Below, piece after piece: positions 15,018 through 59,637 of a DNA stretch of 64,000 bases (positions are counted from its first letter, which is position 1; every line of letters starts with the position of its first letter). The position numbers were made by a program, and so were the translations under genes. The notes beneath the pieces were generated by a model that had not been told where the DNA came from, made no database searches, and was given only the letters and a program-made list of their open reading frames with translations. The stretch is from NCBI GenBank assembly GCA_051294905.1, contig CM119376.1:23746001-23810000 (forward strand), read 5' to 3'. This stretch comes from Botryllus schlosseri. Lineage: Eukaryota.

Positions 15018-15549
15018 CATAGTGTCCTATATGGCGTCGACACAGGCAAATCTCACGCCTCAGTGGGATTGTATCACGTCATAATTTCCATTTGGCTACA
15101 GGCAATTTGACGGTCATTTTTGACCGGCTTGCCAAGCATTAAATTTGGTAAGACGGGTATCAATCGAAAGCTGACTCTGCACTGATTACAAAAATATAAA
15201 TTTTATTCCGCTCGTGGAATGGACAATGCTGTCTGGTTCTTTTTCTCTTGAGCTACTCTCTCCTTTCGCCAGAGAGCATTGTTGCGTCACAATGCCAATC
15301 TCCATAACAATGAAAAATTCGAGGCTGGTTGTGGGAGTTCCAGGGCCACGAGCGGAATAAAATTTATATTTTCGTAATCAGTGCAGAGTCAGCTTTCGAT
15401 TGATACCCATTTTACCAAATTTAATGCTCGGCAAGCCGATCAAAAATGGCCGTCAAATTGCCTGTAGCCAAATGGAAATTGTGACGTGTTACAATTAATT
15501 TCATTGAGGCGTGAGATTTGCCTGTGTCGACACCATATAGGACACTATG
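15018..15549. mobile_element. MITE with ~205-bp TIRs, ~600 bp upstream of peptide precursor 1 ATG
   Basis: CATAGTGTCCTATATGG...CCATATAGGACACTATG inverted arms, flanked by GTAA on both sides (possible 4-bp TSD). Confidence 0.8.
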
Positions 15550-16148
15550 GTAACATAGTCCGATATTAAAGTCATACGGCAGGTCGTCAGTCATGTTATA
15601 ATATTTTTATTAAGTCCTACTCAAAACGACGCAAGGATATCCTATACACTGAAAAGATGTTGGGGAGTCGAACCGACTTGAAACATCCACGCACCCTACC
15701 TTAGCCTACATATAATGATAAACGAATTAAAATAAGAGGCATTAGCCTGTGCCTATTTGCCCTACGCTGGGACATGGGCACATCATAACACACATAGCAT
15801 GTAAATATAACACATAGATGTTCTCGACAAGACATAGGCCTATACTTCCCAGTATATTTGGTGAAGATAAATTTCCAGCAAGATAATAATTGAAGAAGGA
15901 TGGATGACCCATACAGCTATTGGAAAAGTACTCGAATTCAAATATTCGACGCCCACACGTGGCAATAAGCAACACTGCTGTGCAAACCACGAGAGGAACC
16001 TACAGAAGGTATATTAGACTTCACTTCCTCTTCATCGTTGTAGTGATATTTACACAATGCATATTATCACTATATATACCTGTATATATATGGGCGTATT
16101 TATTCGACAGTGTAGGTTTGAGAAGTACACTCGGGACGTAAGATTCTT

Positions 16149-17059
16149 GTGATGAAATTAGCGTTCGCTGCTCTTCTTCTCCTGGCTGTGGTAGCCGGGG
16201 GGTATGGTCGTACCATAAGTCACTACAAAAGTATATTGTGTAGACATCATACGCGGCACTACAGACATCTCTTCAATAAGTATCGTCGTCTGTATCTGGC
16301 AGCCAACAGAAACTATGCGGTCATGCTGAATCGCCAACGCCATATGGCTAGAATGCTGATGAGAACTGGTAACTCCCTCGTCAAACAAGCGCGCGTTATG
16401 AGAAAGTGGTAAGGTCCGATTTATCCTGAGACCAACACTAGTAAAATATGAAATGTGATTCTTTTACAGGAGAGGAGACGAAATTGAAGAATTAAAACCC
16501 ATTAATGATGAATCGTTCGACAGCGTCCCTGAAAACATCCAGGAACCCGATTTTGAACAAAATATCGAGAAAAGTGACCAGAAAACTGATCTCGATAATG
16601 TGGCCGACCACTTCGCCGATTCTGATGTAGAAAAGGACCAGTTATTGGCTTATGATGACCTTGATAAATCGGATCACGAAGGTATAGGTTTGCTTCATTG
16701 CTTATCACGCATGGCACTTTAGAAGCGACACGCTGCTGGCGTGCATGGCAGTCATTTATCAAATGCTGGAGATTGTAAATATAGTGATCTTATTGTGATT
16801 CAGACAGTCTCGATGTTGGCACCTCTATTGCGAAGTCCACTAGCGCACTGCAATGCCTTTTAAAAGACTTTGTTTTTCATTGATCCACTTTAGGCCTACA
16901 CATCTTTTAACCGGACCACATTTCTAAAAACTTCACTTGACATTTTGCGATACTTTCATAATCTACCAACTAATTTTACCATCGAACATTGACATAATAA
17001 CGTGACCCATTCATCTGGTTTGCATTGCAGAAGCCACGGAAGAAGCCAAAAGCGAATAG
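16149..17059 (+). CDS. Secreted cationic-peptide precursor 1 (signal + 68-aa Arg/His/Tyr-rich domain + G + acidic tail), 166 aa; putative antimicrobial/host-defence peptide
   Basis: Coding exons 16149-16408, 16470-16681, 17031-17059 (TAG); probable 5'UTR intron 16009-16115; AATAAA at 17209. Protein: MMKLAFAALLLLAVVAGGYG / RTISHYKSILCRHHTRHYRHLFNKYRRLYLAANRNYAVMLNRQRHMARMLMRTGNSLVKQARVMRKWR / GDEIEELKPINDESFDS...DDLDKSDHEEATEEAKSE. Gene model seen in sequence; function inferred. Confidence 0.85.
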
Positions 17060-18987
17060 ACCATGGACCGATACTACAAAACTGTGATGATCGATCCCGT
17101 GATATCCCATCACGAATTATTGTAATGATGTGTGTGATATGTATACTTGGGATTTTCAGAATCGTATTGATATGTTCGTGCATACGTAAAAAACTACATG
17201 GCGAATACAATAAATTTGTGCATTTGCAAGTTATACGTCTTCTTCTATCTTGTCGCATCACATGAGCCAAGGCGACAGTGAATAATCGCCGGGCCTTATA
17301 GACACTGAGCTATATAAACTATATGAGCTTATAGAACGTTGGGCCATTGCATGAATGGGAAAACGCGCAACAATATTCATATACGACAGATAAAAATTTC
17401 CCAAGGATGATGATGCCTCATTGTACAGAAAGATAGCCTACGTCATATCATATTTTATATGAACTGTAGAATAGCTACTGTTAATGTCGTGACAAGTCCA
17501 GGAACACTCGTGAGCAATCTGAGCATATGTTCAAAGGCAAAACCTTCCATACTATTGATCCGCTTGGTCGGATATGAAGACGTTAGTGTCCGAGCTCTTA
17601 GGCGCCAGGTCGTATAGAAATCGATGGTTTCGGTCAGGGATATCTAGATGTCCCTGGTTTCGGTCAACATGCGACGTTCATTTCTGGCAAGTTCTTTTAT
17701 CACCAACGATCTTTCTGGCTCTTAGTTTTAGAGCTGTACTTTACTGGCTGTTTTGTATATCCTGGAGCCCAAAAATTATGGGTTATTATGGGTTAAGCTT
17801 TTTCCATGCTCTTGCAGAACGAAAGCGAATAAGGCATGCTTAGGACTATAGCATCTACATGGCGTGTTAGGAGGGCCTGTGACCGAGCTAGCACAGCACT
17901 GTATACTGCACTAGGCCTTTATAAGCAATAAACCTTCGAAATAGAATAGAGTAGTAAATCTTTACTCAAGTAGGATACCAGTAAAAGTAGCGATTCCCAA
18001 GTATAGGTAAAAAGGGTAAGTAATCTGACCCTATAGTTTTACCTAAAACCTAAAAAAGACTGCCAAGTAGAAGTAGTCTGAGACCATACCTACTTGAGCA
18101 AGTAGTGCAAGTGGCCACAATCTACTTGAGTAGATAGAATAGAAGTACTTCGCTACTGGCCACACCTCAGTCAATAACAGAGGCAAGTAAATCGATCCTT
18201 TCTGCTGATCCATTAAAGTGAAATTATTTTAACTCCCCTTCCCGGACCGACAATTTGTTTAGTGGGCGCTTACCAATAAATCGATCTTTTGAAACGACTG
18301 AGATGAAATCAATACAAAATACAAATACAGTGGACAAATAATTATTTCACTCGTTAATCTGTTTCGGGTGGCCATGGATTCAATCATCTCTCTCTGTCTG
18401 TGATAACTTAATTCCTCAAATGGAACTAGTTGACTAATCGTAAATTAGGTACTTTGAGCAGGTAGAACGATGCCAATAGGAGCTTTTTGACACCACAAGA
18501 TACGGTTATAACTTGGATTGCATTTAAAACAAAAATCAAATAAAACAATTATGTTTAAAACATGGCCCTAGCTTAAAACATATTATTTATTGTTATTTTT
18601 AAGCCCCGATGTCGCGATTTTCAATTGTGTCGTCACAGTTGATTGTCGTTGTTATATGGTTTGGTCAACATGGTTCCTTTGACGGAAAAGCTTTCTGAGT
18701 CCTGTTTTAAACGGAACAAAAATATTGGTGGCCAGGACTCATTGTCATGAACCATTTTTACGGTCGGCGACCAGTTAAACATAACTACATGCTACAACTG
18801 CTGAACCGACGACAATTTCGTGTGTTGCAACCATTCCATATCGTATACGTTGACTGTATCTAATGCAAGTCGATCTTTGACGTCGACTACATGTCTTTTT
18901 GAAAGTATTTACACAATTATGACATCATTACACAACTCTTGAAAAAAATGGTTTTTATTTGAAATTACTTTTTTTCAAAACAAAGTC

Positions 18988-21376
18988 CAGTGTTGGGATG
19001 ACTCGAGTCATGACTTGACTCGAGTCAGACTCGAGTCACCTTTTTCGTATGACTTGACTTGACTCGAGTCACTTTGCTGAAATGACTTGACTTGACTTGA
19101 CTCGGCCTATCAGAAATGGGGATTGACTCGTGACTCGGAGCAAAATTCACGAGTCTATTTCAAGTCATCAAGTAATCGGTGTCGATCAGAATCACTGCAT
19201 CTTGCATATGTTCGGATTGTTAGCGAAACGCTGGTGTAACCCGTGAGAGCGACCAATCAATTAATGAACGTGCGTTTTACTGAGCCTCCATTGTTCTCTC
19301 ACAAATACATTAACCGCAAACGAAGTGATCGAAGCTTACAGCTTACGTTGCCGTAAACTAGTATAGTAAAGTAATTTTTGTTCTCTGTTTTACCTTAACC
19401 AAACTTCTTGTTTTATTGAAACTGAATTCGAATATAGTTTGTATCAGAGTTGGACCAATTACATTATTTCAGTTCAATTACAATTACAATTACAATTACT
19501 TTCATGCATGTTTCAATTACATTACAATTACAATTACTCCATGCTAAAAATATCAAATTACAATTACAATTACAATTACTCCTTGCACGCTTCAATTACA
19601 TTACAATTACAATTACAATTGCTGCTGTTGAACATGTAATTGAATAATCATAAATTCAACCGTGCTCCTTGACAACCGTAGCGTCGTAATTAACAACAAT
19701 TCAAGTATTCATGTTTCATTCATGATAAGCTAATACCCGGTAATTAATAAAAGAAAAACGTTTTCGAACTATTCCAGTATGCACTATGTCGTTGAAAAAA
19801 GTATTATAATCATGCACGGGTTGGATTTGCGTATATAGTATATAATTAAAGAAATAATATTATTTTTATCGAGGGACGTAGGAATTAGGATGAGTGGTGG
19901 AAACAAAACCGTGCTTTGTCAGATAAGACGTTGTATAATATCCGGTGGTCTGGTTAGTTAGCCAGACGAAGTAACGATGCAGCATCGTGATCTGAAATCG
20001 TATTGTAGATTGCCAACCCACGGATAGATGCGCAAGATGTGAGTCACGGATGAATGCACCGACAAACGTACTGCAGAGCCGGCTAAAAGCAGCAAACTTT
20101 GTAGTCCTAGAGCTGGCAATTCAAGCGTCCAAATTTGATGCATCTGGTCTTTATCGTAAGCTATTGATGCACTAATTCCGAAAATACAAATTAAAATCTC
20201 GTCAGGGCAATGCAACTGCTCCAAAATAGCCGTTTAAGGCCGACTGTTCTGAAAAGTGAGAGCGTCGCAGCAGCATGACCACAACAATGACCAATTACTC
20301 CCAGCGATTGTTCAGAACAATGCCGATTCCCAGACTTTCACGACTATTTTGGGATGGTACCATTGCCTGGAAATATACTTTTATTGCGGAGTCAGTGTGA
20401 CACATAGCTTTCGATTAGGACCATACATATCAAATTTCGACGCTTGGATCGTTAGCTATGGGACTATCAATTCTGCTGCTTTTAGCCGGCTCAGCAGTTC
20501 GCTTCTCGGCGTATTCAATCGTGAGTCACGTGTTGCGAATCCATCCGTTGGTTAGTAATCTAATAATTGTATACAATGGCAGCCGAGGCCAGCATAGCGG
20601 TAAAAATAAAAAACTTCGCCCGCAAGGGCGCAGTCAAGGGCTTCCTCGAATGGATCCACCAAATTCCTTGTCGACATTTAAAGAGAATGCATTATAAGTC
20701 AATTATTTTATGTTGTGCAACTTGTGCTTGTCAGGTCTCAATAGCAATTTAATGTAATTGAAATTGTAATTGAGCAAAATTTTTGTCAAATTACAATTAC
20801 AATTACAATTACACAAAATAAAAATGCTTCAATTACAATTACATTACAATTACATTGAAATATGTAATTAATTACATTACATTACATTACAAATTACAAT
20901 TGATCCAACTCTGGTTTGTATAGTCCTCAACCATTGGCGCAGGCTCGAATTGTATCATATCGATTTGTAAATGCGTAATGTATTGCATCTTATCAATTCG
21001 TATCTATTCCCTATCTTGGCTGGTAACTATAAACTGAGGTTTACGCATATGTGAGCGATACAGCGCCTTCTCGCATGTATATTTAACTTTATATTCGTTC
21101 ATCGGTTCAAAATCAATGACCACTCAATCTGTATTGCAGACAGCTAGCAAAATGCAATGGCGTTATCATGCCTCATACTTCGAAAAGGCAACTTGACTTG
21201 AATTGTGACTTGACTTGACTTGACTCGACTTGACTCGAGTCACCTCCAAAAATCGAGTGACTTGACTTGACTCGAGTCACCTTTGAAAATCGATTGACTT
21301 GACTTGACTCGAGTCAAAATGTTCAATGACTCGAAATGACTCGTGACTCGAAGGTAGTGACTTGATCCCAACACTG
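18988..21376. mobile_element. hAT-type element of the GACTCGAGTC family (CAGTGTTGGG ends), interrupted by an ATTACA-repeat MITE
   Basis: Ends CAGTGTTGGGA/TCCCAACACTG. After removing 19445-20913 it is colinear (rev-comp) with the uninterrupted copy at 45596-46553. Confidence 0.85.
19445..20913. mobile_element. hAT-type MITE with (ATTACA)n subterminal arrays
   Basis: TIR CAGAGTTGGACCAATT/AATTGATCCAACTCTG; perfect 8-bp TSD GTTTGTAT (19437-19444, 20914-20921). Confidence 0.88.
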
Positions 21377-22121
21377 TTGTAAACATGTTTTGAACAAACA
21401 GTTTTACCACACTTCTTGTTTTAAATACAACCCTATAGTTATAACCTATTTTGTTATGGATCGCTTTTGGTTAAAAAAAATGCAACATCCTGTAGTGTAG
21501 ATACCAATCTGTTCATATGTTATGATCTATGTCCATGTCCAGCAATGCCATTCGTGGGATGGTTCGAGGCATTGGAAGTGGAACACTGTTATCGGAGTTG
21601 TTTTTTACGCACGCATTCAGTGGCGTATATTCGCCACATTTCAGAAAGACCCAAATGTCAGACTTGTACCAACTAATCTGGATTTTCAGAATGCGCAGCT
21701 ATTATAGATCAAGAACTAGGCTACTTCATTTTCAACGCTCGCAACTAGCACTGGAACCACTCAAAATTAGCAGTTAGTCGATCTTCAACTAACTATATTG
21801 GTAATTTGTAGAAGTCTGGAATCATCAAGCGAGCAAGCGTGAGCAATTGGGCACGGAGCAAGCTCCTCGAATTTTCACTATAAATTCATTCCGTCACATT
21901 AAAGTCCGGAATTGTGTTTTGTTTTCAACTCAACACCGATGTCTTCGCACGTCGCAGACCGCTTTCGAGGCATGTCAGATCTGACATTCCTATGACACTG
22001 AAAGAGTTCACAGAGTTTGTGGTAATATAGTATATATCTTTCATTGATATAATATTTAAGCGTCGGGACATATAGACAGGTCGCCATAGCAATTCTCATG
22101 ATTGCTTGAGAGCATTTGATG

Positions 22122-24139
22122 CAGGGTTGTAATGACTCGAGTCAGACTCGAGTCACGATTTTTTTATGACTCGACTTGACTCGAGTCATTTTCTTGAAAT
22201 GGGAAAATGACTCGACTCGACTCGAGTCAATATTTGGATTGACTCGACTTGTACTCGAGTCATTACGCATGACTCGACCCAAGTCATTGACTCGGCTTAT
22301 TTTATATGACTTGAAGATGAAGAAATTTGCGAATCGTAATGGCTAGATCAACGCATCCGACGAATTCTGCCGACATCGCTATTTGTCACCACTGCTTTCG
22401 TTGCACTTGTCTGATATCAGATATGCCACCGTAAAAACAACAGGAAATGATACATAGTAGCAATAATGCATTGTACAAAATCGTCCAGTGATGAAGAGGT
22501 AATAGATCCTCCGCAATTAAAGTACTCAAGACTTTTCAATTATACAAGCAAACAATTGAAGCAAAATTAGAGCCAATGAAATGACTCAGATGGTCAAGAG
22601 ACTGATAAGCTCATGTGTAGATTTGAAGGCGATGATTCTTTGCATTTTTGGGCGACTAGAAAGAATGAGTATTCAATGCTCTTCAGTGTGGTTCAAAAAT
22701 GCTCTAGTGCACTAGTGGAACGTGTATTCAATAGATGTGGATTCATTCTACGGCCATGCCGCTTTAACATATCTGAGGATCTCCTTTCCACATTAGTATT
22801 TTTGAGGTGTAACTCATTGATTTGATCTGCTGTCTGTGAAGACACACAATGCCCCTCGTCCATTTGACGTTTTGTTAGGTATGTGCATTGTGCACGTGAG
22901 TATAATAATAAATGGATAATGTTGTGTGATGTTTGTACAATATGGCTGTTCTAAAATATCTTCTTTTTTATTTTACTGGGTGGTTACTTGATAAAATTGT
23001 TATGTTGCATAAAAGGAACACTGAATCTGGCTTAATTTGAAAAAAGTGGAATCAATGATGTGAGAGGAGAATATTTTGGATTTGAAAATAAATGGAGTAT
23101 TTTAGTTAGAAATTCTCTCACATAATATAATTACATAGTAGTAAGCCGACTATTCTTTCATATCCAAAACATTCTACTCTAATAACTTCACTTTTTCTAG
23201 TTGGAATTGAGTCAAATTTGCTATGAATCATATTTTTACACAATGTAACAATATTATGAGATAGCCGGTAAAATTCTAAAATCTCTATTTGTAATTAGTC
23301 TAAAATTTTCTTTCACAGCATTGCTTTCTACTGGTTGGAATTGAGCCAAATTTGATTTTTTAGGCAATCTAGTAATTTTAAGAAGTAGCCGGAAAATTTG
23401 AAAAAATGTTTTTGAACAGCTCCATTGTACAAATATTTATCCAATGCTGTAACTGCGATGTAGTCTGTAATGCAATTGGGAAAACCTTTAGTATAATCAA
23501 AAGGTATCTGTTCTGTTGTCGCTGCACAATGCACATAGTTGCATGCACGCTTTTACAGCATGCTCGCCTGTTGTAAATACCTCTACATAAACATGCATCT
23601 ATTGATTCTCTATCAACTAGTATCTTGCCGTGAATTTGTTGGTTCTCTATCAGATAGTATGTAGACGTGAATTCGTTGGTTCTCAATCAGCTATTCGTGA
23701 GCTATCGTCGATGTGCTCATAATAAAAACTGAATGCTTGTATTGGTGATGTTTCTGACTGACAAGAGAGATATTTGATTGTAAGTTCAAAGATTAGTAAA
23801 GTTATATTTAGCATCGGTAAATGAGGCAAGGACCTGTCCGTTATCTGCCTAAATAAACACGTGCCAAGACTCTGATAGGGACAAAATGAGCATGTTTCGC
23901 AAACAAGGAATTCGATATCACCCAAGCAGGATTGAAAACATGAGTTGAACATATGACTTCAATACTGTGACTTGGACTCGACTCGAGTCATAACACCATG
24001 ACTCGGACTTGACCCTTTAAACGGTGACTTGGACTCGGACTCGAGTCTGTGATGAATTGAAAATGACTCGACTCGAGTCAAAACCACAAAAGTATGATTG
24101 ACTCGTGACTCGTGACCATGTGACTTGGTTACAACCCTG
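22122..24139. mobile_element. hAT deletion derivative (GACTCGAGTC family) retaining a transposase C-terminal relic
   Basis: Ends CAGGGTTGTAA/TTACAACCCTG; TSD ATTTGATG/ATTCGATG (7/8); carries a hAT dimerisation-domain relic and a nested MITE at 22941-23424 (TSD TTGTACAA). Confidence 0.85.
22613..22825 (+). pseudogene. hAT transposase C-terminal dimerisation domain remnant
   Basis: DSLHFWATRKNEYSMLFSVVQKCSSALVERVFNRCGFILRPCRFNISEDLLSTLVFLRCN fits the L-x-FW...YP-x-L...S-x-x-x-ER-x-FS...R-x-x-L...L-x-FL-x-x-N pattern, with the IPAT segment lost. Confidence 0.8.
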
Positions 24140-30765: not shown

Positions 30766-32468
30766 ATGAAATTAGCCTTCGTTGCACTTGCACTGATGGC
30801 AGTACTAGCCGGCTGTTCAGGTGCTAGGTGTCATACGAAGTTCGAAAGACTTTTCCATTCGTACTTTGGACTGTATCACCGTACTCTGAAGAAGACGTAC
30901 GCTATCAAGCGTCATATGAGAGGGGTAGAACATTATCTGTGGCAAAATGGAGTTAAATTGAACAAATATGGCCGTTCTCTCATCCGCTACAGGTAAAGTC
31001 AATACTTATAGCATCCGACTTATTATATTAGTCACATATATCGCCGCTGTGGAATCAAAGTATAGCTTACTTTCATTTTGCACATTTTGAGAAAATTAAT
31101 TCATGTTAAGTTTTCATTTTCTTTCGGTCATATCTTGGCCACGATAAACTTTGAGAAAATGTGATAAACATAAACATGGTCATGATATGGCCGAAAAAAT
31201 GAATATTTTACAAAAACTTGATTTTCTATAACTTTGAAAAATGGGTCTCAAAATTTAAAAAAAGACATAAGATACTTTGATCCCATCGCGACAATATACG
31301 GTATCATGAGTCTCATCTCTAATTCCAATATCAAATTATGGAGTTTGAATATCGCCTTGATAAGACACTACAGGACAAAGTGTATCGTGAGGAGCCATAC
31401 GCACGAATTACCTCTTCCATTCTTGAGCGGCGAGTTAGCATGCTTTTTACCGCACCAACAGTAAACAATAGTACTTGAGTCATTATTTGATAGCCAATGC
31501 ACGCTTTGAAGGACAAGGTAATTTCTGTTGTTCGTGTCGCAAGATTGTGAAATCATATAGGATCGGTATATCTGAGTTTCTCATTAACAGTCCCTTAAAA
31601 TGCGTAGGCCTATATATCTGTAAAAGTCCCACATGATACGTTGACTTCATGTCCATGGAATAATAAGGCTGTATTATTGTGTCGCAAATAGGAATGGTCC
31701 TGAACAATGCCTATTTGTCTGTCAGACCTCGTGGGGATCAGGAGATTGCTGACATTCCTGATATCCAAAATTTGGAAGACACTGAAGACATGAATCCGAC
31801 TGCAGACGAAGCGAATCAATACGAAAACTTGTTTGAGGATTCAGACCTTGACGATCATCACGGTGAGACACGTCTTAAATCAGATTCTTTCTAGCCTACT
31901 TGATTTAAATGCGAAGCCTGACTTTTTGTTTTTCACAAGCATTATACTATGTGAGATATGGCTGTCATTACGGTAGAACTGAAAAATGGAAATATTCTAT
32001 ATTTATTTTAGGATAGCGTACTATTGTCAGTGGTCTAAATAAATGACGTGACGCGTGCAAACTCAGCACAAACAATACTATTGCAGGTTAATATCCATAG
32101 TGAGTGAGAGAAGGGAGGGGGTAGGTTGGGACATCACCGTATAGTGGGGGTGGTTACAGTGGCATAGTGGAAATATGCTGACACGCTGTACGTCCATGAT
32201 GTTGACATCTCATCCCTCCCCCAATTAGCATATTATGTATGTAGTTTGGATATAGATGGTTGAAGGCACAGTATCACATGTATAAAAGGGATGAGACCAG
32301 GTAGGCCTATATTTACACCGGGTGTATCACTATAAATGCGTTCAGCATATATTATATCTGTTTACGATTCGTATCATTCATCACTCGGGAAATTCACAGA
32401 ATAATAAAAAAATGTACATGCTTACTTTTACAGACGAAGACGAAGAATCACAGTCTATTCAAGAATGA
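30766..32468 (+). CDS. Secreted cationic-peptide precursor 2 (paralogue of precursor 1), 132 aa; putative antimicrobial/host-defence peptide
   Basis: Coding exons 30766-30992, 31726-31862, 32434-32468 (TGA); 5'UTR intron 30567-30730; AATAAA at 32534. Protein: MKLAFVALALMAVLAGCSG / ARCHTKFERLFHSYFGLYHRTLKKTYAIKRHMRGVEHYLWQNGVKLNKYGRSLIRYRPR / GDQEIADIPDIQNLEDTED...DLDDHHDEDEESQSIQE. Intron phases (2, then 1) are the same as in precursor 1. Confidence 0.85.

Positions 32469-33702: not shown

Positions 33703-59637
<25,935 letters not shown>

What the first reader, a model, noticed from the sequence alone, without database searches (positions are those of the whole stretch)
16401..16490. Conserved R-G-D at the cationic/acidic boundary: amidation and processing site (or integrin ligand)
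Seen: precursor 1 reads ...MRKW|R-G-D-EIEE and precursor 2 reads ...IRYR|PR-G-D-QEIAD (31726-31745). RGD is kept although the surrounding sequence has diverged, and it appears only after splicing. Known: as I recall, clavanin and styelin precursors end the mature peptide at X-G-D, where Gly is the amide donor. RGD is also the canonical integrin motif. Inference: most likely an amidated C-terminal Arg released by cleavage before Asp; a second role as an opsonin/integrin ligand in the unprocessed form is possible.
Basis: partly seen in the sequence, partly recalled or inferred. Interest (0 to 1): 0.7.

Follow-up and report, generated by a model that had tools for sequence, protein, structure and literature searches.

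The report
RGD at sea-squirt peptide-precursor boundary
Two neighbouring sea-squirt genes encode secreted precursors in which a positively charged, antimicrobial-peptide-like part meets an acidic tail exactly at Arg-Gly-Asp. This matches the Gly-Asp processing and amidation boundary of the known sea-squirt peptides clavanin and styelin, but with only two genes available neither that role nor an integrin-binding role is shown.

Summary
The sequence facts hold. P1 (16152-17059, 165 aa) reads ...MRKW-RGD-EIEE and P2 (30766-32468, 132 aa) reads ...IRYRP-RGD-QEIAD. RNA contigs and raw RNA reads confirm both P1 introns and high expression; P2 splicing is inferred only.

Three corrections apply:
- The RGD codons lie wholly inside exon 2, so splicing does not create them.
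- Glu-Ile after RGD is also kept.
- With two paralogues about 27% identical, a kept tripeptide at a named place has p of roughly 0.02-0.06.

However, P1 and P2 belong to neither family. They give no Pfam hit, no profile or shuffle-tested similarity, and have different intron positions, and 1.84 billion representative proteins gave no relative. In botryllin, a true styelin relative, the boundary Gly is Lys.

Most likely (about 0.4) RGD marks a Gly|Asp processing site that yields a C-terminal Arg-amide on a long amphipathic cationic peptide. Inherited sequence with no special role is nearly as likely. An integrin role has no support. This is an orphan variant of a known precursor layout, of modest interest. 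The scan had already noted the gene pair on this window.

The parts
16102..17221 (+). P1 transcript (about 710 nt after splicing), no 5'-UTR intron
   Evidence: Contig pieces of runs X3 and X7 span 16102/16109 to 17203/17221. Raw reads carrying a template-switch-oligo tail begin at 16102 and 16114, which marks the transcription start.
16152..16408 (+). P1 coding exon 1: 19-aa signal peptide plus the 67-aa cationic His/Tyr/Arg-rich part (net +17); ends inside the Trp86 codon (phase 2)
   Evidence: Translation and charge count. Mean helical hydrophobic moment above shuffles, p=0.003.
16409..16469 (+). P1 intron 1, 61 nt, GT..AG
   Evidence: Joint 16407>16469 (cut +1) in contigs of X1, X3 and X7 and in 287 raw reads of X23.
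16471..16479 (+). P1 Arg87-Gly88-Asp89 codons (AGA GGA GAC), wholly inside exon 2
   Evidence: No variant here in four runs.
16470..16681 (+). P1 coding exon 2: RGD plus most of the acidic tail
   Evidence: From RGD to the stop the tail has net charge -22.
17031..17059 (+). P1 coding exon 3 (last 9 residues and TAG stop at 17057-17059)
   Evidence: Joint 16679>17029 (cut +2), GT..AG, in X3 and X7 contigs and 358 raw reads; translation.
30766..30992 (+). P2 coding exon 1: signal peptide plus the 58-aa cationic part (net +12); ends inside the Arg76 codon (phase 2)
   Evidence: Mean hydrophobic moment p=0.014. The only DNA-level similarity to P1 is the signal-peptide region, 47 nt at 77%.
31730..31738 (+). 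P2 Arg78-Gly79-Asp80 codons (CGT GGG GAT), inside exon 2 after a Pro codon
31726..31862 (+). P2 coding exon 2 (acidic tail). Splice sites are canonical but not checked with reads.
   Evidence: AG acceptor with a pyrimidine tract, GT donor, continuous frame, and the same intron phases as P1.
32434..32468 (+). P2 coding exon 3 (last 11 residues and TGA stop at 32466-32468)
   Evidence: From RGD to the stop the tail has net charge -21.

Best explanation
P1 and P2 are two old tandem paralogues, 14.6 kb apart on the same strand, of a family without detectable relatives in a styelid sea squirt. Each encodes a prepro-protein with three parts: a conserved signal peptide, a long (58-67 aa) amphipathic, cationic part rich in His, Tyr and Arg, and a Gly-free acidic tail of about equal and opposite charge. 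This is the layout of tunicate haemocyte antimicrobial-peptide precursors.

The Gly of R-G-D sits exactly at the charge flip, as the Gly does in clavanin and styelin precursors. The most likely reading is that RGD is the processing boundary. An endoprotease would cut between Gly and Asp. Peptidylglycine alpha-amidating monooxygenase (PAM) would then use the exposed Gly to leave a C-terminal Arg-amide. The acidic tail would serve as a neutralising pro-piece that is discarded.

Shown: the gene models, P1 splicing and high P1 expression, the charge layout, the amphipathicity, the X-G-D precedent, and retention of RGD at protein level despite different codons.

Inferred: the signal-peptide cleavage site, the processing site, amidation, antimicrobial activity, and the cell type that expresses the genes.
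For: - Gene models and splicing.
- P1 is highly expressed. 4,515 of 12.9 million sampled reads lie on a 0.7-kb mRNA, about 350 per million.
- Charges are +17/-22 and +12/-21.
- The cationic parts have a higher mean helical hydrophobic moment than their own shuffles, p=0.003 and 0.014.
- P1 and P2 are truly related outside the signal peptide: Smith-Waterman score 78 against 47+-9 for shuffles, p=0.001.
- They are old. DNA similarity survives only in 47 nt of the signal peptide, and about half of identical residues use other codons.
- RGD is kept with all three codons changed.
- This Gly is the only x-G-[D/E] in each protein and one of only two Gly in mature P1. The acidic tails contain no Gly.
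- All nine fetched clavanin and styelin precursors read mature peptide-G-D-acidic tail, and those peptides are amidated (PMC10608444).
- From general knowledge, not tested here: C-terminal Arg-amide occurs in other marine antimicrobial peptides such as tachyplesin.
Against: - There are only two family members, so a kept triple at this place has p of roughly 0.02-0.06.
- No Lys or Arg follows the Gly, as in canonical amidation signals (G-K-R, G-R-R). A Gly|Asp endoprotease is postulated, not known.
- P1 and P2 show no homology to clavanins or styelins. Their intron lies before RGD in phase 2, whereas styelin-E has a phase-0 intron after G-D-M and clavanin-C has none at that point. The precedent is therefore at best convergent.
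- In botryllin the residue aligned to the styelin Gly is Lys, so a boundary Gly is dispensable even within that family.
- A 58-68-aa product is long for a linear helical antimicrobial peptide and may be cut further.
- No peptide-level data exist.
Confidence: 0.4

Rival explanations
1. The tripeptide has no specific role. RGD is simply inherited sequence at the hinge between the two parts. Arg belongs to the basic side, Asp to the acidic side, and Gly is a flexible linker residue. The protein is processed elsewhere or not at all.
For: - Only two sequences are available, at 27% identity outside the signal peptide. About 1.6 identical runs of 3 or more are expected there.
- The global alignment does not pair the RGDs.
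- Other islands are kept as well, including E-I after RGD and F-x-D-S-D in the tails.
- Botryllin lacks the boundary Gly.
- The AlphaFold model of P2 puts RGD in its least confident, non-helical stretch, residues 73-83, which would suit a plain linker.
Against: - The Gly sits exactly at the charge flip in both genes, and Gly is otherwise rare or absent around it.
- All three codons have changed while the residues stayed the same.
- The same G-D boundary is used by two other tunicate peptide families.
Confidence: 0.35
2. Cleavage is by a basic-residue-specific convertase after the Arg (R|G-D). Carboxypeptidase trimming may follow. Gly stays on the discarded tail and there is no amidation.
For: - In P1, R-K-W-R|G fits the minimal furin pattern R-x-x-R (read from the sequence; the consensus is from general knowledge).
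- Furin is reported inside Botryllus morula-cell granules (PMC9966394).
- The database botryllin has K-K-D at the aligned place.
Against: - In P2 the site is R-Y-R-P-R|G. Basic residues fall at P1, P3 and P5, with Pro at P2. That does not fit the convertase rule of basic residues at P2, P4 or P6 (sequence; rule from general knowledge).
- This reading does not explain why Gly is kept.
Confidence: 0.12
3. RGD is a working integrin ligand. The unprocessed protein, or the released tail, bridges microbes bound by the cationic part to haemocyte integrins and so acts as an opsonin or adhesion cue.
For: - RGD is present in both proteins.
- It lies in a probably flexible stretch, though the model confidence is low.
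- Ascidian macropinocytosis and phagocytosis are reported to involve integrins and RGD-containing molecules (PMC5465252).
Against: - There is no evidence beyond the tripeptide itself, and RGD occurs by chance in many proteins.
- If the precursor is processed at this boundary, as in clavanins and styelins, the motif is destroyed.
- Botryllin has no RGD.
- Nothing here tests binding.
Confidence: 0.05

Closest known systems
Styelins (Pfam PF17562) of Styela clava, and botryllin of Botryllus schlosseri
   Same: The layout is the same: signal peptide, a cationic helical peptide rich in Tyr, His, Lys and Arg directly after it, then a boundary and an acidic C-terminal tail. Styelins read ...HAL-G-D-MTDEE and are amidated. 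The precursor size of botryllin (158 aa) is similar to P1 (165 aa). All come from styelid ascidians.
   Different: - P1 and P2 give no Pfam hit at E<=10, whereas botryllin still scores E=0.008 and styelin D 1e-41.
- hhalign probability is below 1% and shuffle tests give p>0.5.
- Styelin-E has four coding exons with a phase-0 intron after G-D-M. P1 and P2 have three, with a phase-2 intron just before RGD.
- The cationic part is about twice as long (58-67 aa against 32).
- Botryllin has K-K-D, not G-D.
Clavanins (Pfam PF05452) of Styela clava
   Same: They are His-rich cationic helical peptides. The mature peptide ends at ...SHVF, followed by G-D and an acidic tail, and is C-terminally amidated.
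   Different: - Clavanins carry an extra N-terminal acidic pro-piece (LEERKSEEEK) and a 23-aa mature peptide.
- Mature peptide, Gly and tail lie in one exon.
- There is no sequence similarity to P1 or P2.
Tachyplesin/polyphemusin-type precursors (horseshoe crab)
   Same: From general knowledge: a signal peptide, a cationic peptide ending in Arg-amide, an amidation signal, then an acidic C-terminal extension.
   Different: These use the canonical Gly-Lys-Arg signal and are disulphide-bonded beta-hairpin peptides from an unrelated phylum. This comparison was not tested here.
Dicynthaurin and halocidin (Halocynthia)
   Same: They are helical tunicate peptides with a single Cys that form disulphide-linked dimers (PMC2866484). 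P1 has one Cys (C30) and P2 has one (C22) near the start of the cationic part.
   Different: Dimerisation of P1 or P2 is only a possibility.

Membership tests
Styelin family (PF17562, including botryllin) | Match to the Styelin profile | tested here: not met
   P1 and P2 give no Styelin hit at E<=10. Controls with the same tool: styelin D 1.1e-41, botryllin 0.0083. hhalign probability 0.2-0.4% and Smith-Waterman shuffle p=0.83-0.89.
Styelin family (PF17562, including botryllin) | Gene structure: four coding exons, cationic peptide split by an intron, phase-0 intron after G-D-M | tested here: not met
   Styelin-E was mapped on locus L001. P1 and P2 have three coding exons, an unsplit cationic part, and a phase-2 intron before RGD.
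Styelin family (PF17562, including botryllin) | Signal peptide directly followed by the cationic peptide, then a Gly-Asp boundary and an acidic tail | tested here: met
   This is a layout resemblance only.
Clavanin family (PF05452) | Match to the Clavanin profile, and an N-terminal acidic pro-piece before a 23-aa His/Phe-rich peptide | tested here: not met
   No hit at E<=10; control clavanin A 1.4e-52. P1 and P2 have no pro-piece between the signal peptide and the cationic part.
Precursors of C-terminally amidated peptides (PAM substrates) | Gly immediately after the last residue of the mature peptide | tested here: inconclusive
   Gly88 (P1) and Gly79 (P2) sit at the charge flip, but the mature end is not known.
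Precursors of C-terminally amidated peptides (PAM substrates) | Basic cleavage signal after the Gly (G-K-R, G-R-R, G-K or G-R) | tested here: not met
   Asp follows the Gly in both proteins. The same exception is seen in clavanins and styelins.
Precursors of C-terminally amidated peptides (PAM substrates) | Amide group on the isolated peptide | not testable with these tools
   Needs mass spectrometry.
Integrin-binding RGD ligands | RGD tripeptide present | tested here: met
Integrin-binding RGD ligands | RGD exposed on a flexible loop of the secreted, unprocessed protein | tested here: inconclusive
   The single-sequence AlphaFold model of P2 has mean pLDDT 55. RGD lies in the non-helical stretch 73-83, where pLDDT is below 50. 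Whether the proprotein is secreted uncut is unknown.
Integrin-binding RGD ligands | RGD-dependent binding to integrin or cells | not testable with these tools
   Needs an adhesion or uptake assay comparing RGD with RGE.
Linear cationic alpha-helical antimicrobial peptides (functional class) | Net positive charge and amphipathic helix | tested here: met
   Charges +17 and +12. Mean hydrophobic moment 0.47 and 0.41 against 0.27 and 0.25 for shuffles. Helix 20-60 in the low-confidence P2 model.
Linear cationic alpha-helical antimicrobial peptides (functional class) | Microbicidal activity | not testable with these tools
   Needs synthetic or purified peptide.

The most novel reading that the evidence does not exclude
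The RGD has two uses. The unprocessed proprotein, released by haemocytes, binds microbes through its cationic helix and presents RGD to phagocyte integrins as an opsonin. Cleavage at Gly|Asp then destroys the motif and frees an Arg-amidated killing peptide. Processing would thus switch the molecule from 'eat me' tag to antibiotic.
Probability: 0.05. Interest if true: 0.65.

Novelty: new variant of a known kind. Interest (0 to 1): 0.3.

Why it matters
If the Gly|Asp reading is right, three styelid peptide families with no detectable sequence relationship use the same non-canonical boundary: clavanins, styelins and this pair. In all three a Gly amide donor is followed directly by Asp, with no basic residues. 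That would point to a dedicated, still unidentified endoprotease that cuts before Asp in ascidian haemocyte granules. It would also give a simple rule for predicting mature ends of tunicate host-defence peptides from genomes. The pair would add a new, unusually long His/Tyr/Arg-rich peptide type to that repertoire. If the reading is wrong, RGD here is just a hinge sequence in two paralogues.

Tried and rejected
**Searches for relatives that found nothing**
- The word-based search with P1 gave no hit at E<=10.
- The exhaustive HMMER search of 1.84 billion representatives with the exon-1 profile gave none. Neither search even returned the query itself, so this genome's proteins are not in those libraries.
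- The ESM Atlas feature search gave nothing usable.
- The PDB sequence search with P2 exon 1 gave nothing.
- Pfam gave only a sub-threshold lipoprotein signal-peptide match for P2.
- tblastn and blastn of the window found no third paralogue.
- A search with botryllin as query returned only botryllin.

**Botryllin lead, rejected**
- The boundary strings look alike (V-M-R-K-W-R-G-D...E-L against V-V-K-K-W-K-K-D...E-L).
- Whole-protein similarity is no better than shuffles, p about 0.2 for P1 and 0.75 for P2, and hhalign agrees.
- Botryllin PCR primers from the paper are not in the window.
- To fetch botryllin I used a probe that combined three epitope strings printed in PMC9966394 with filler. 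Only the returned database sequence was used afterwards.

**Exact-product look-ups**
- P2 is not on record.
After that I sent full-length P1 to no remote tool and used it only in local scripts.

**Literature**
- A text search for printed clavanin or styelin precursor strings found nothing relevant.
- Lehrer 2003 and Tincu & Taylor 2004 are not held.

**Considered and set aside**
- Resemblance of the acidic RGD-bearing tail to osteopontin/SIBLING-type proteins is compositional only, and no test was possible.
- A neuropeptide-precursor reading does not fit. The cationic part follows the signal peptide directly, the tail is acidic, and there is no dibasic-flanked repeat pattern.

Full report
**1. 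What is in the sequence**

The window carries two small three-exon genes on the + strand, 14.6 kb apart.
- P1 has coding exons 16152-16408, 16470-16681 and 17031-17059 and encodes 165 aa.
- P2 has coding exons 30766-30992, 31726-31862 and 32434-32468 and encodes 132 aa.

Both start with the same signal peptide (M-K-L-A-F...A-G). A cationic part rich in His, Tyr and Arg follows: 67 aa with net +17 in P1, and 58 aa with net +12 in P2. Each ends in an acidic tail, net -22 and -21. The intron phases are the same in both genes: phase 2, then phase 1.

P1 reads ...M-R-K-W-R-G-D-E-I-E-E across the first junction.

**2. Transcript evidence**

Transcript contigs from two independent studies (X3, X7) and raw RNA reads (X23) join 16408 to 16470 and 16681 to 17031, at GT..AG introns of 61 and 349 nt.
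- About 290 and 360 raw reads cross the two joints.
- Reads carrying a template-switch-oligo tail start at 16102 and 16114, so the transcript begins there.
- 4,515 of 12.9 million sampled reads fall on this 0.7-kb mRNA, which means strong expression.
- Several amino-acid variants are seen among runs (K26R, S27R, R71S, K78R, F102L, D136N). None lies in W-R-G-D.

Reads were laid on P1. The P2 model therefore rests on canonical splice sites, frame continuity and the shared phases.

**3. Corrections to the observation**

- The RGD codons lie entirely inside exon 2 in both genes (16471-16479 and 31730-31738). Splicing does not create the motif; it only brings it next to the cationic part.
- Relative to the shared intron, the two RGDs are offset by one residue (Pro in P2).
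- Glu-Ile after RGD is kept as well.

**4. Is it more than chance?**

- P1 and P2 are truly related outside the signal peptide: Smith-Waterman score 78 against 47+-9 for segment-wise shuffles, p=0.001.
- The duplication is old. Identity in the mature part is 27%. DNA similarity survives only in 47 nt of the signal-peptide region. About half of identical residues use different codons.
- All three RGD codons differ (AGA GGA GAC against CGT GGG GAT). The retention is therefore at protein level and is not a splice-site or DNA-level constraint.
- At 27% identity, a pre-named triple stays identical with p about 0.02, times up to three for the allowed offset. About 1.6 identical runs of three or more are expected somewhere in the mature part. 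A global MAFFT alignment does not pair the two RGDs.

What makes the site notable is its position, not the statistics. The Gly sits exactly at the charge flip in both proteins. It is the only x-G-[D/E] in each and one of only two Gly in mature P1. The acidic tails contain no Gly.

**5. The recalled precedent**

An exact look-up returned Styela clava clavanin A, C, D and E and styelin D, E and a styelin-D-like precursor.
- Every clavanin reads ...S-H-V-F-G-D-D-Q-Q.
- Every styelin reads ...H-A-L (or H-V-V)-G-D-M-T-D-E-E.

In each case the known mature peptide is followed by Gly, then Asp and an acidic tail. A review lists both groups as C-terminally amidated (PMC10608444).

**6. Family membership**

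P1 and P2 belong to neither family.
- Pfam holds Styelin (PF17562) and Clavanin (PF05452) models. P1 and P2 hit neither at E<=10. With the same tool, styelin D scores 1e-41, clavanin A 1e-52, and the divergent botryllin still scores E=0.008.
- hhalign of the P1/P2 pair against styelins, styelins plus botryllin, or clavanins gives probabilities below 1%. Shuffle tests give p>0.5. The control botryllin against styelin D is clearly significant, 82 against 33+-7.
- Gene structures differ. Styelin-E has four coding exons, with the cationic peptide split and a phase-0 intron after G-D-M. Clavanin-C has peptide, Gly and tail in one exon. P1 and P2 have an unsplit cationic exon and a phase-2 intron just before RGD.

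Earlier notes of this scan identify the genome as a styelid sea squirt other than S. clava. They also report a botryllin-like paralogue on another piece. I could not read that sequence.

**7. Botryllin as a check on the Gly**

Botryllin (P0001) is a true styelin relative. In the botryllin-styelin alignment, the styelin G-D pairs with K-D. The paper's own epitope variant reads W-G-K-D (PMC9966394). So even within one family the boundary Gly is not fixed.

The botryllin boundary (V-V-K-K-W-K-K-D-S-D-K-E-L) looks like that of P1 (V-M-R-K-W-R-G-D-E-I-E-E-L). However, the whole-protein similarity is not above shuffles, p about 0.2. I treat this as a lead only.

**8. Function of the cationic part**

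- Both cationic parts have a mean helical hydrophobic moment well above their own shuffles: 0.47 against 0.27, p=0.003, and 0.41 against 0.25, p=0.014.
- A single-sequence AlphaFold model of P2 has low confidence (mean pLDDT 55). It shows one long helix, residues 20-60, and places RGD in its least confident, non-helical stretch, residues 73-83.
- Each protein has a single Cys near the start of the cationic part. This recalls the disulphide-linked tunicate peptides dicynthaurin and halocidin (PMC2866484).
- A conserved signal peptide combined with a fast-diverging mature part is typical of host-defence peptide gene families. That statement rests on general knowledge.

**9. Weighing the readings**

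- **Processing boundary with Gly as amide donor, about 0.4.** It fits the position of the Gly, the protein-level retention and the two precedents. It needs an unknown protease that cuts before Asp, and it rests on two sequences.
- **No specific role, hinge sequence kept by descent, about 0.35.** The statistics and botryllin keep this rival strong.
- **Convertase cleavage after Arg, about 0.12.** This fits P1 (R-K-W-R|G, the R-x-x-R pattern). It does not fit P2 (R-Y-R-P-R|G, with basic residues at P1, P3 and P5 and Pro at P2).
- **Integrin ligand or opsonin, about 0.05.** The only support is the tripeptide and the report that ascidian uptake involves integrins and RGD-containing molecules (PMC5465252). 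Processing at this site would destroy the motif.

**10. Verdict**

The sequence observation is real, with small corrections.

The gene pair is an orphan variant of the known 'signal - cationic peptide - acidic tail' precursor kind. Interest is modest.

Noticed in passing
window 16239-16241 (P1 Cys30) and 30829-30831 (P2 Cys22): Each precursor has a single Cys near the start of the cationic part. P2 has another inside the signal-peptide region (Cys17). This could allow disulphide-linked dimers, as in the tunicate peptides dicynthaurin and halocidin.
   Followed up: no
window 16682-17030 (P1 intron 2), run X1: One 835-nt contig of run X1 splices intron 1 but runs straight through intron 2 at full depth. 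It is either an intron-retaining transcript, which would end the tail early, or pre-mRNA/DNA carry-over. X3, X7 and the raw reads of X23 splice it out.
   Followed up: no
window 16228, 16230, 16364, 16384, 16518, 16618: Six amino-acid-changing variants of P1 appear among four RNA runs: K26R, S27R, R71S, K78R, F102L and D136N. Three of the four in the cationic part exchange or add a basic residue (K26R, S27R, K78R); R71S removes one. K78R and F102L differ from the assembly in every run.
   Followed up: partly
window 16590-16620 (P1) and 31830-31850 (P2): There is a second conserved island in the otherwise diverged acidic tails: F-[A/E]-D-S-D-[V/L]-[E/D]. D-H is also kept as the last residues before intron 2. 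The Ser flanked by acidic residues could be a phosphorylation site.
   Followed up: no
window 19016-22247: This stretch holds a cluster of short repeats built on the palindrome TGACTCGAGTCA and on TGACTTGACTTGAC units. There are eight or more copies, lying between the two genes.
   Followed up: no
window 31037-31298 (P2 intron 1): A roughly 230-nt stretch matches its own reverse complement at 65% identity. It may be a foldback or a MITE-like insertion inside the intron.
   Followed up: no
window 15019-15045 (-), 15522-15557 (+), 51830-51880 (-): Three short translated matches of the type L-C-[R/N]-[R/H]-H-I-x-H-Y resemble the L-C-R-H-H-T-R-H-Y stretch of P1. They are probably a dispersed repeat that resembles it by chance, since no DNA-level match to P1 was found.
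   Followed up: partly
P0001 (botryllin, nr) against PMC9966394 Table 4: The database botryllin reads V-V-K-K-W-K-K-D-S-D-K-E-L at the cationic/acidic boundary. The paper's antibody epitope reads V-K-G-W-G-K-D-S-D-K-E-L. The boundary Gly therefore varies between botryllin transcripts or alleles.
   Followed up: partly
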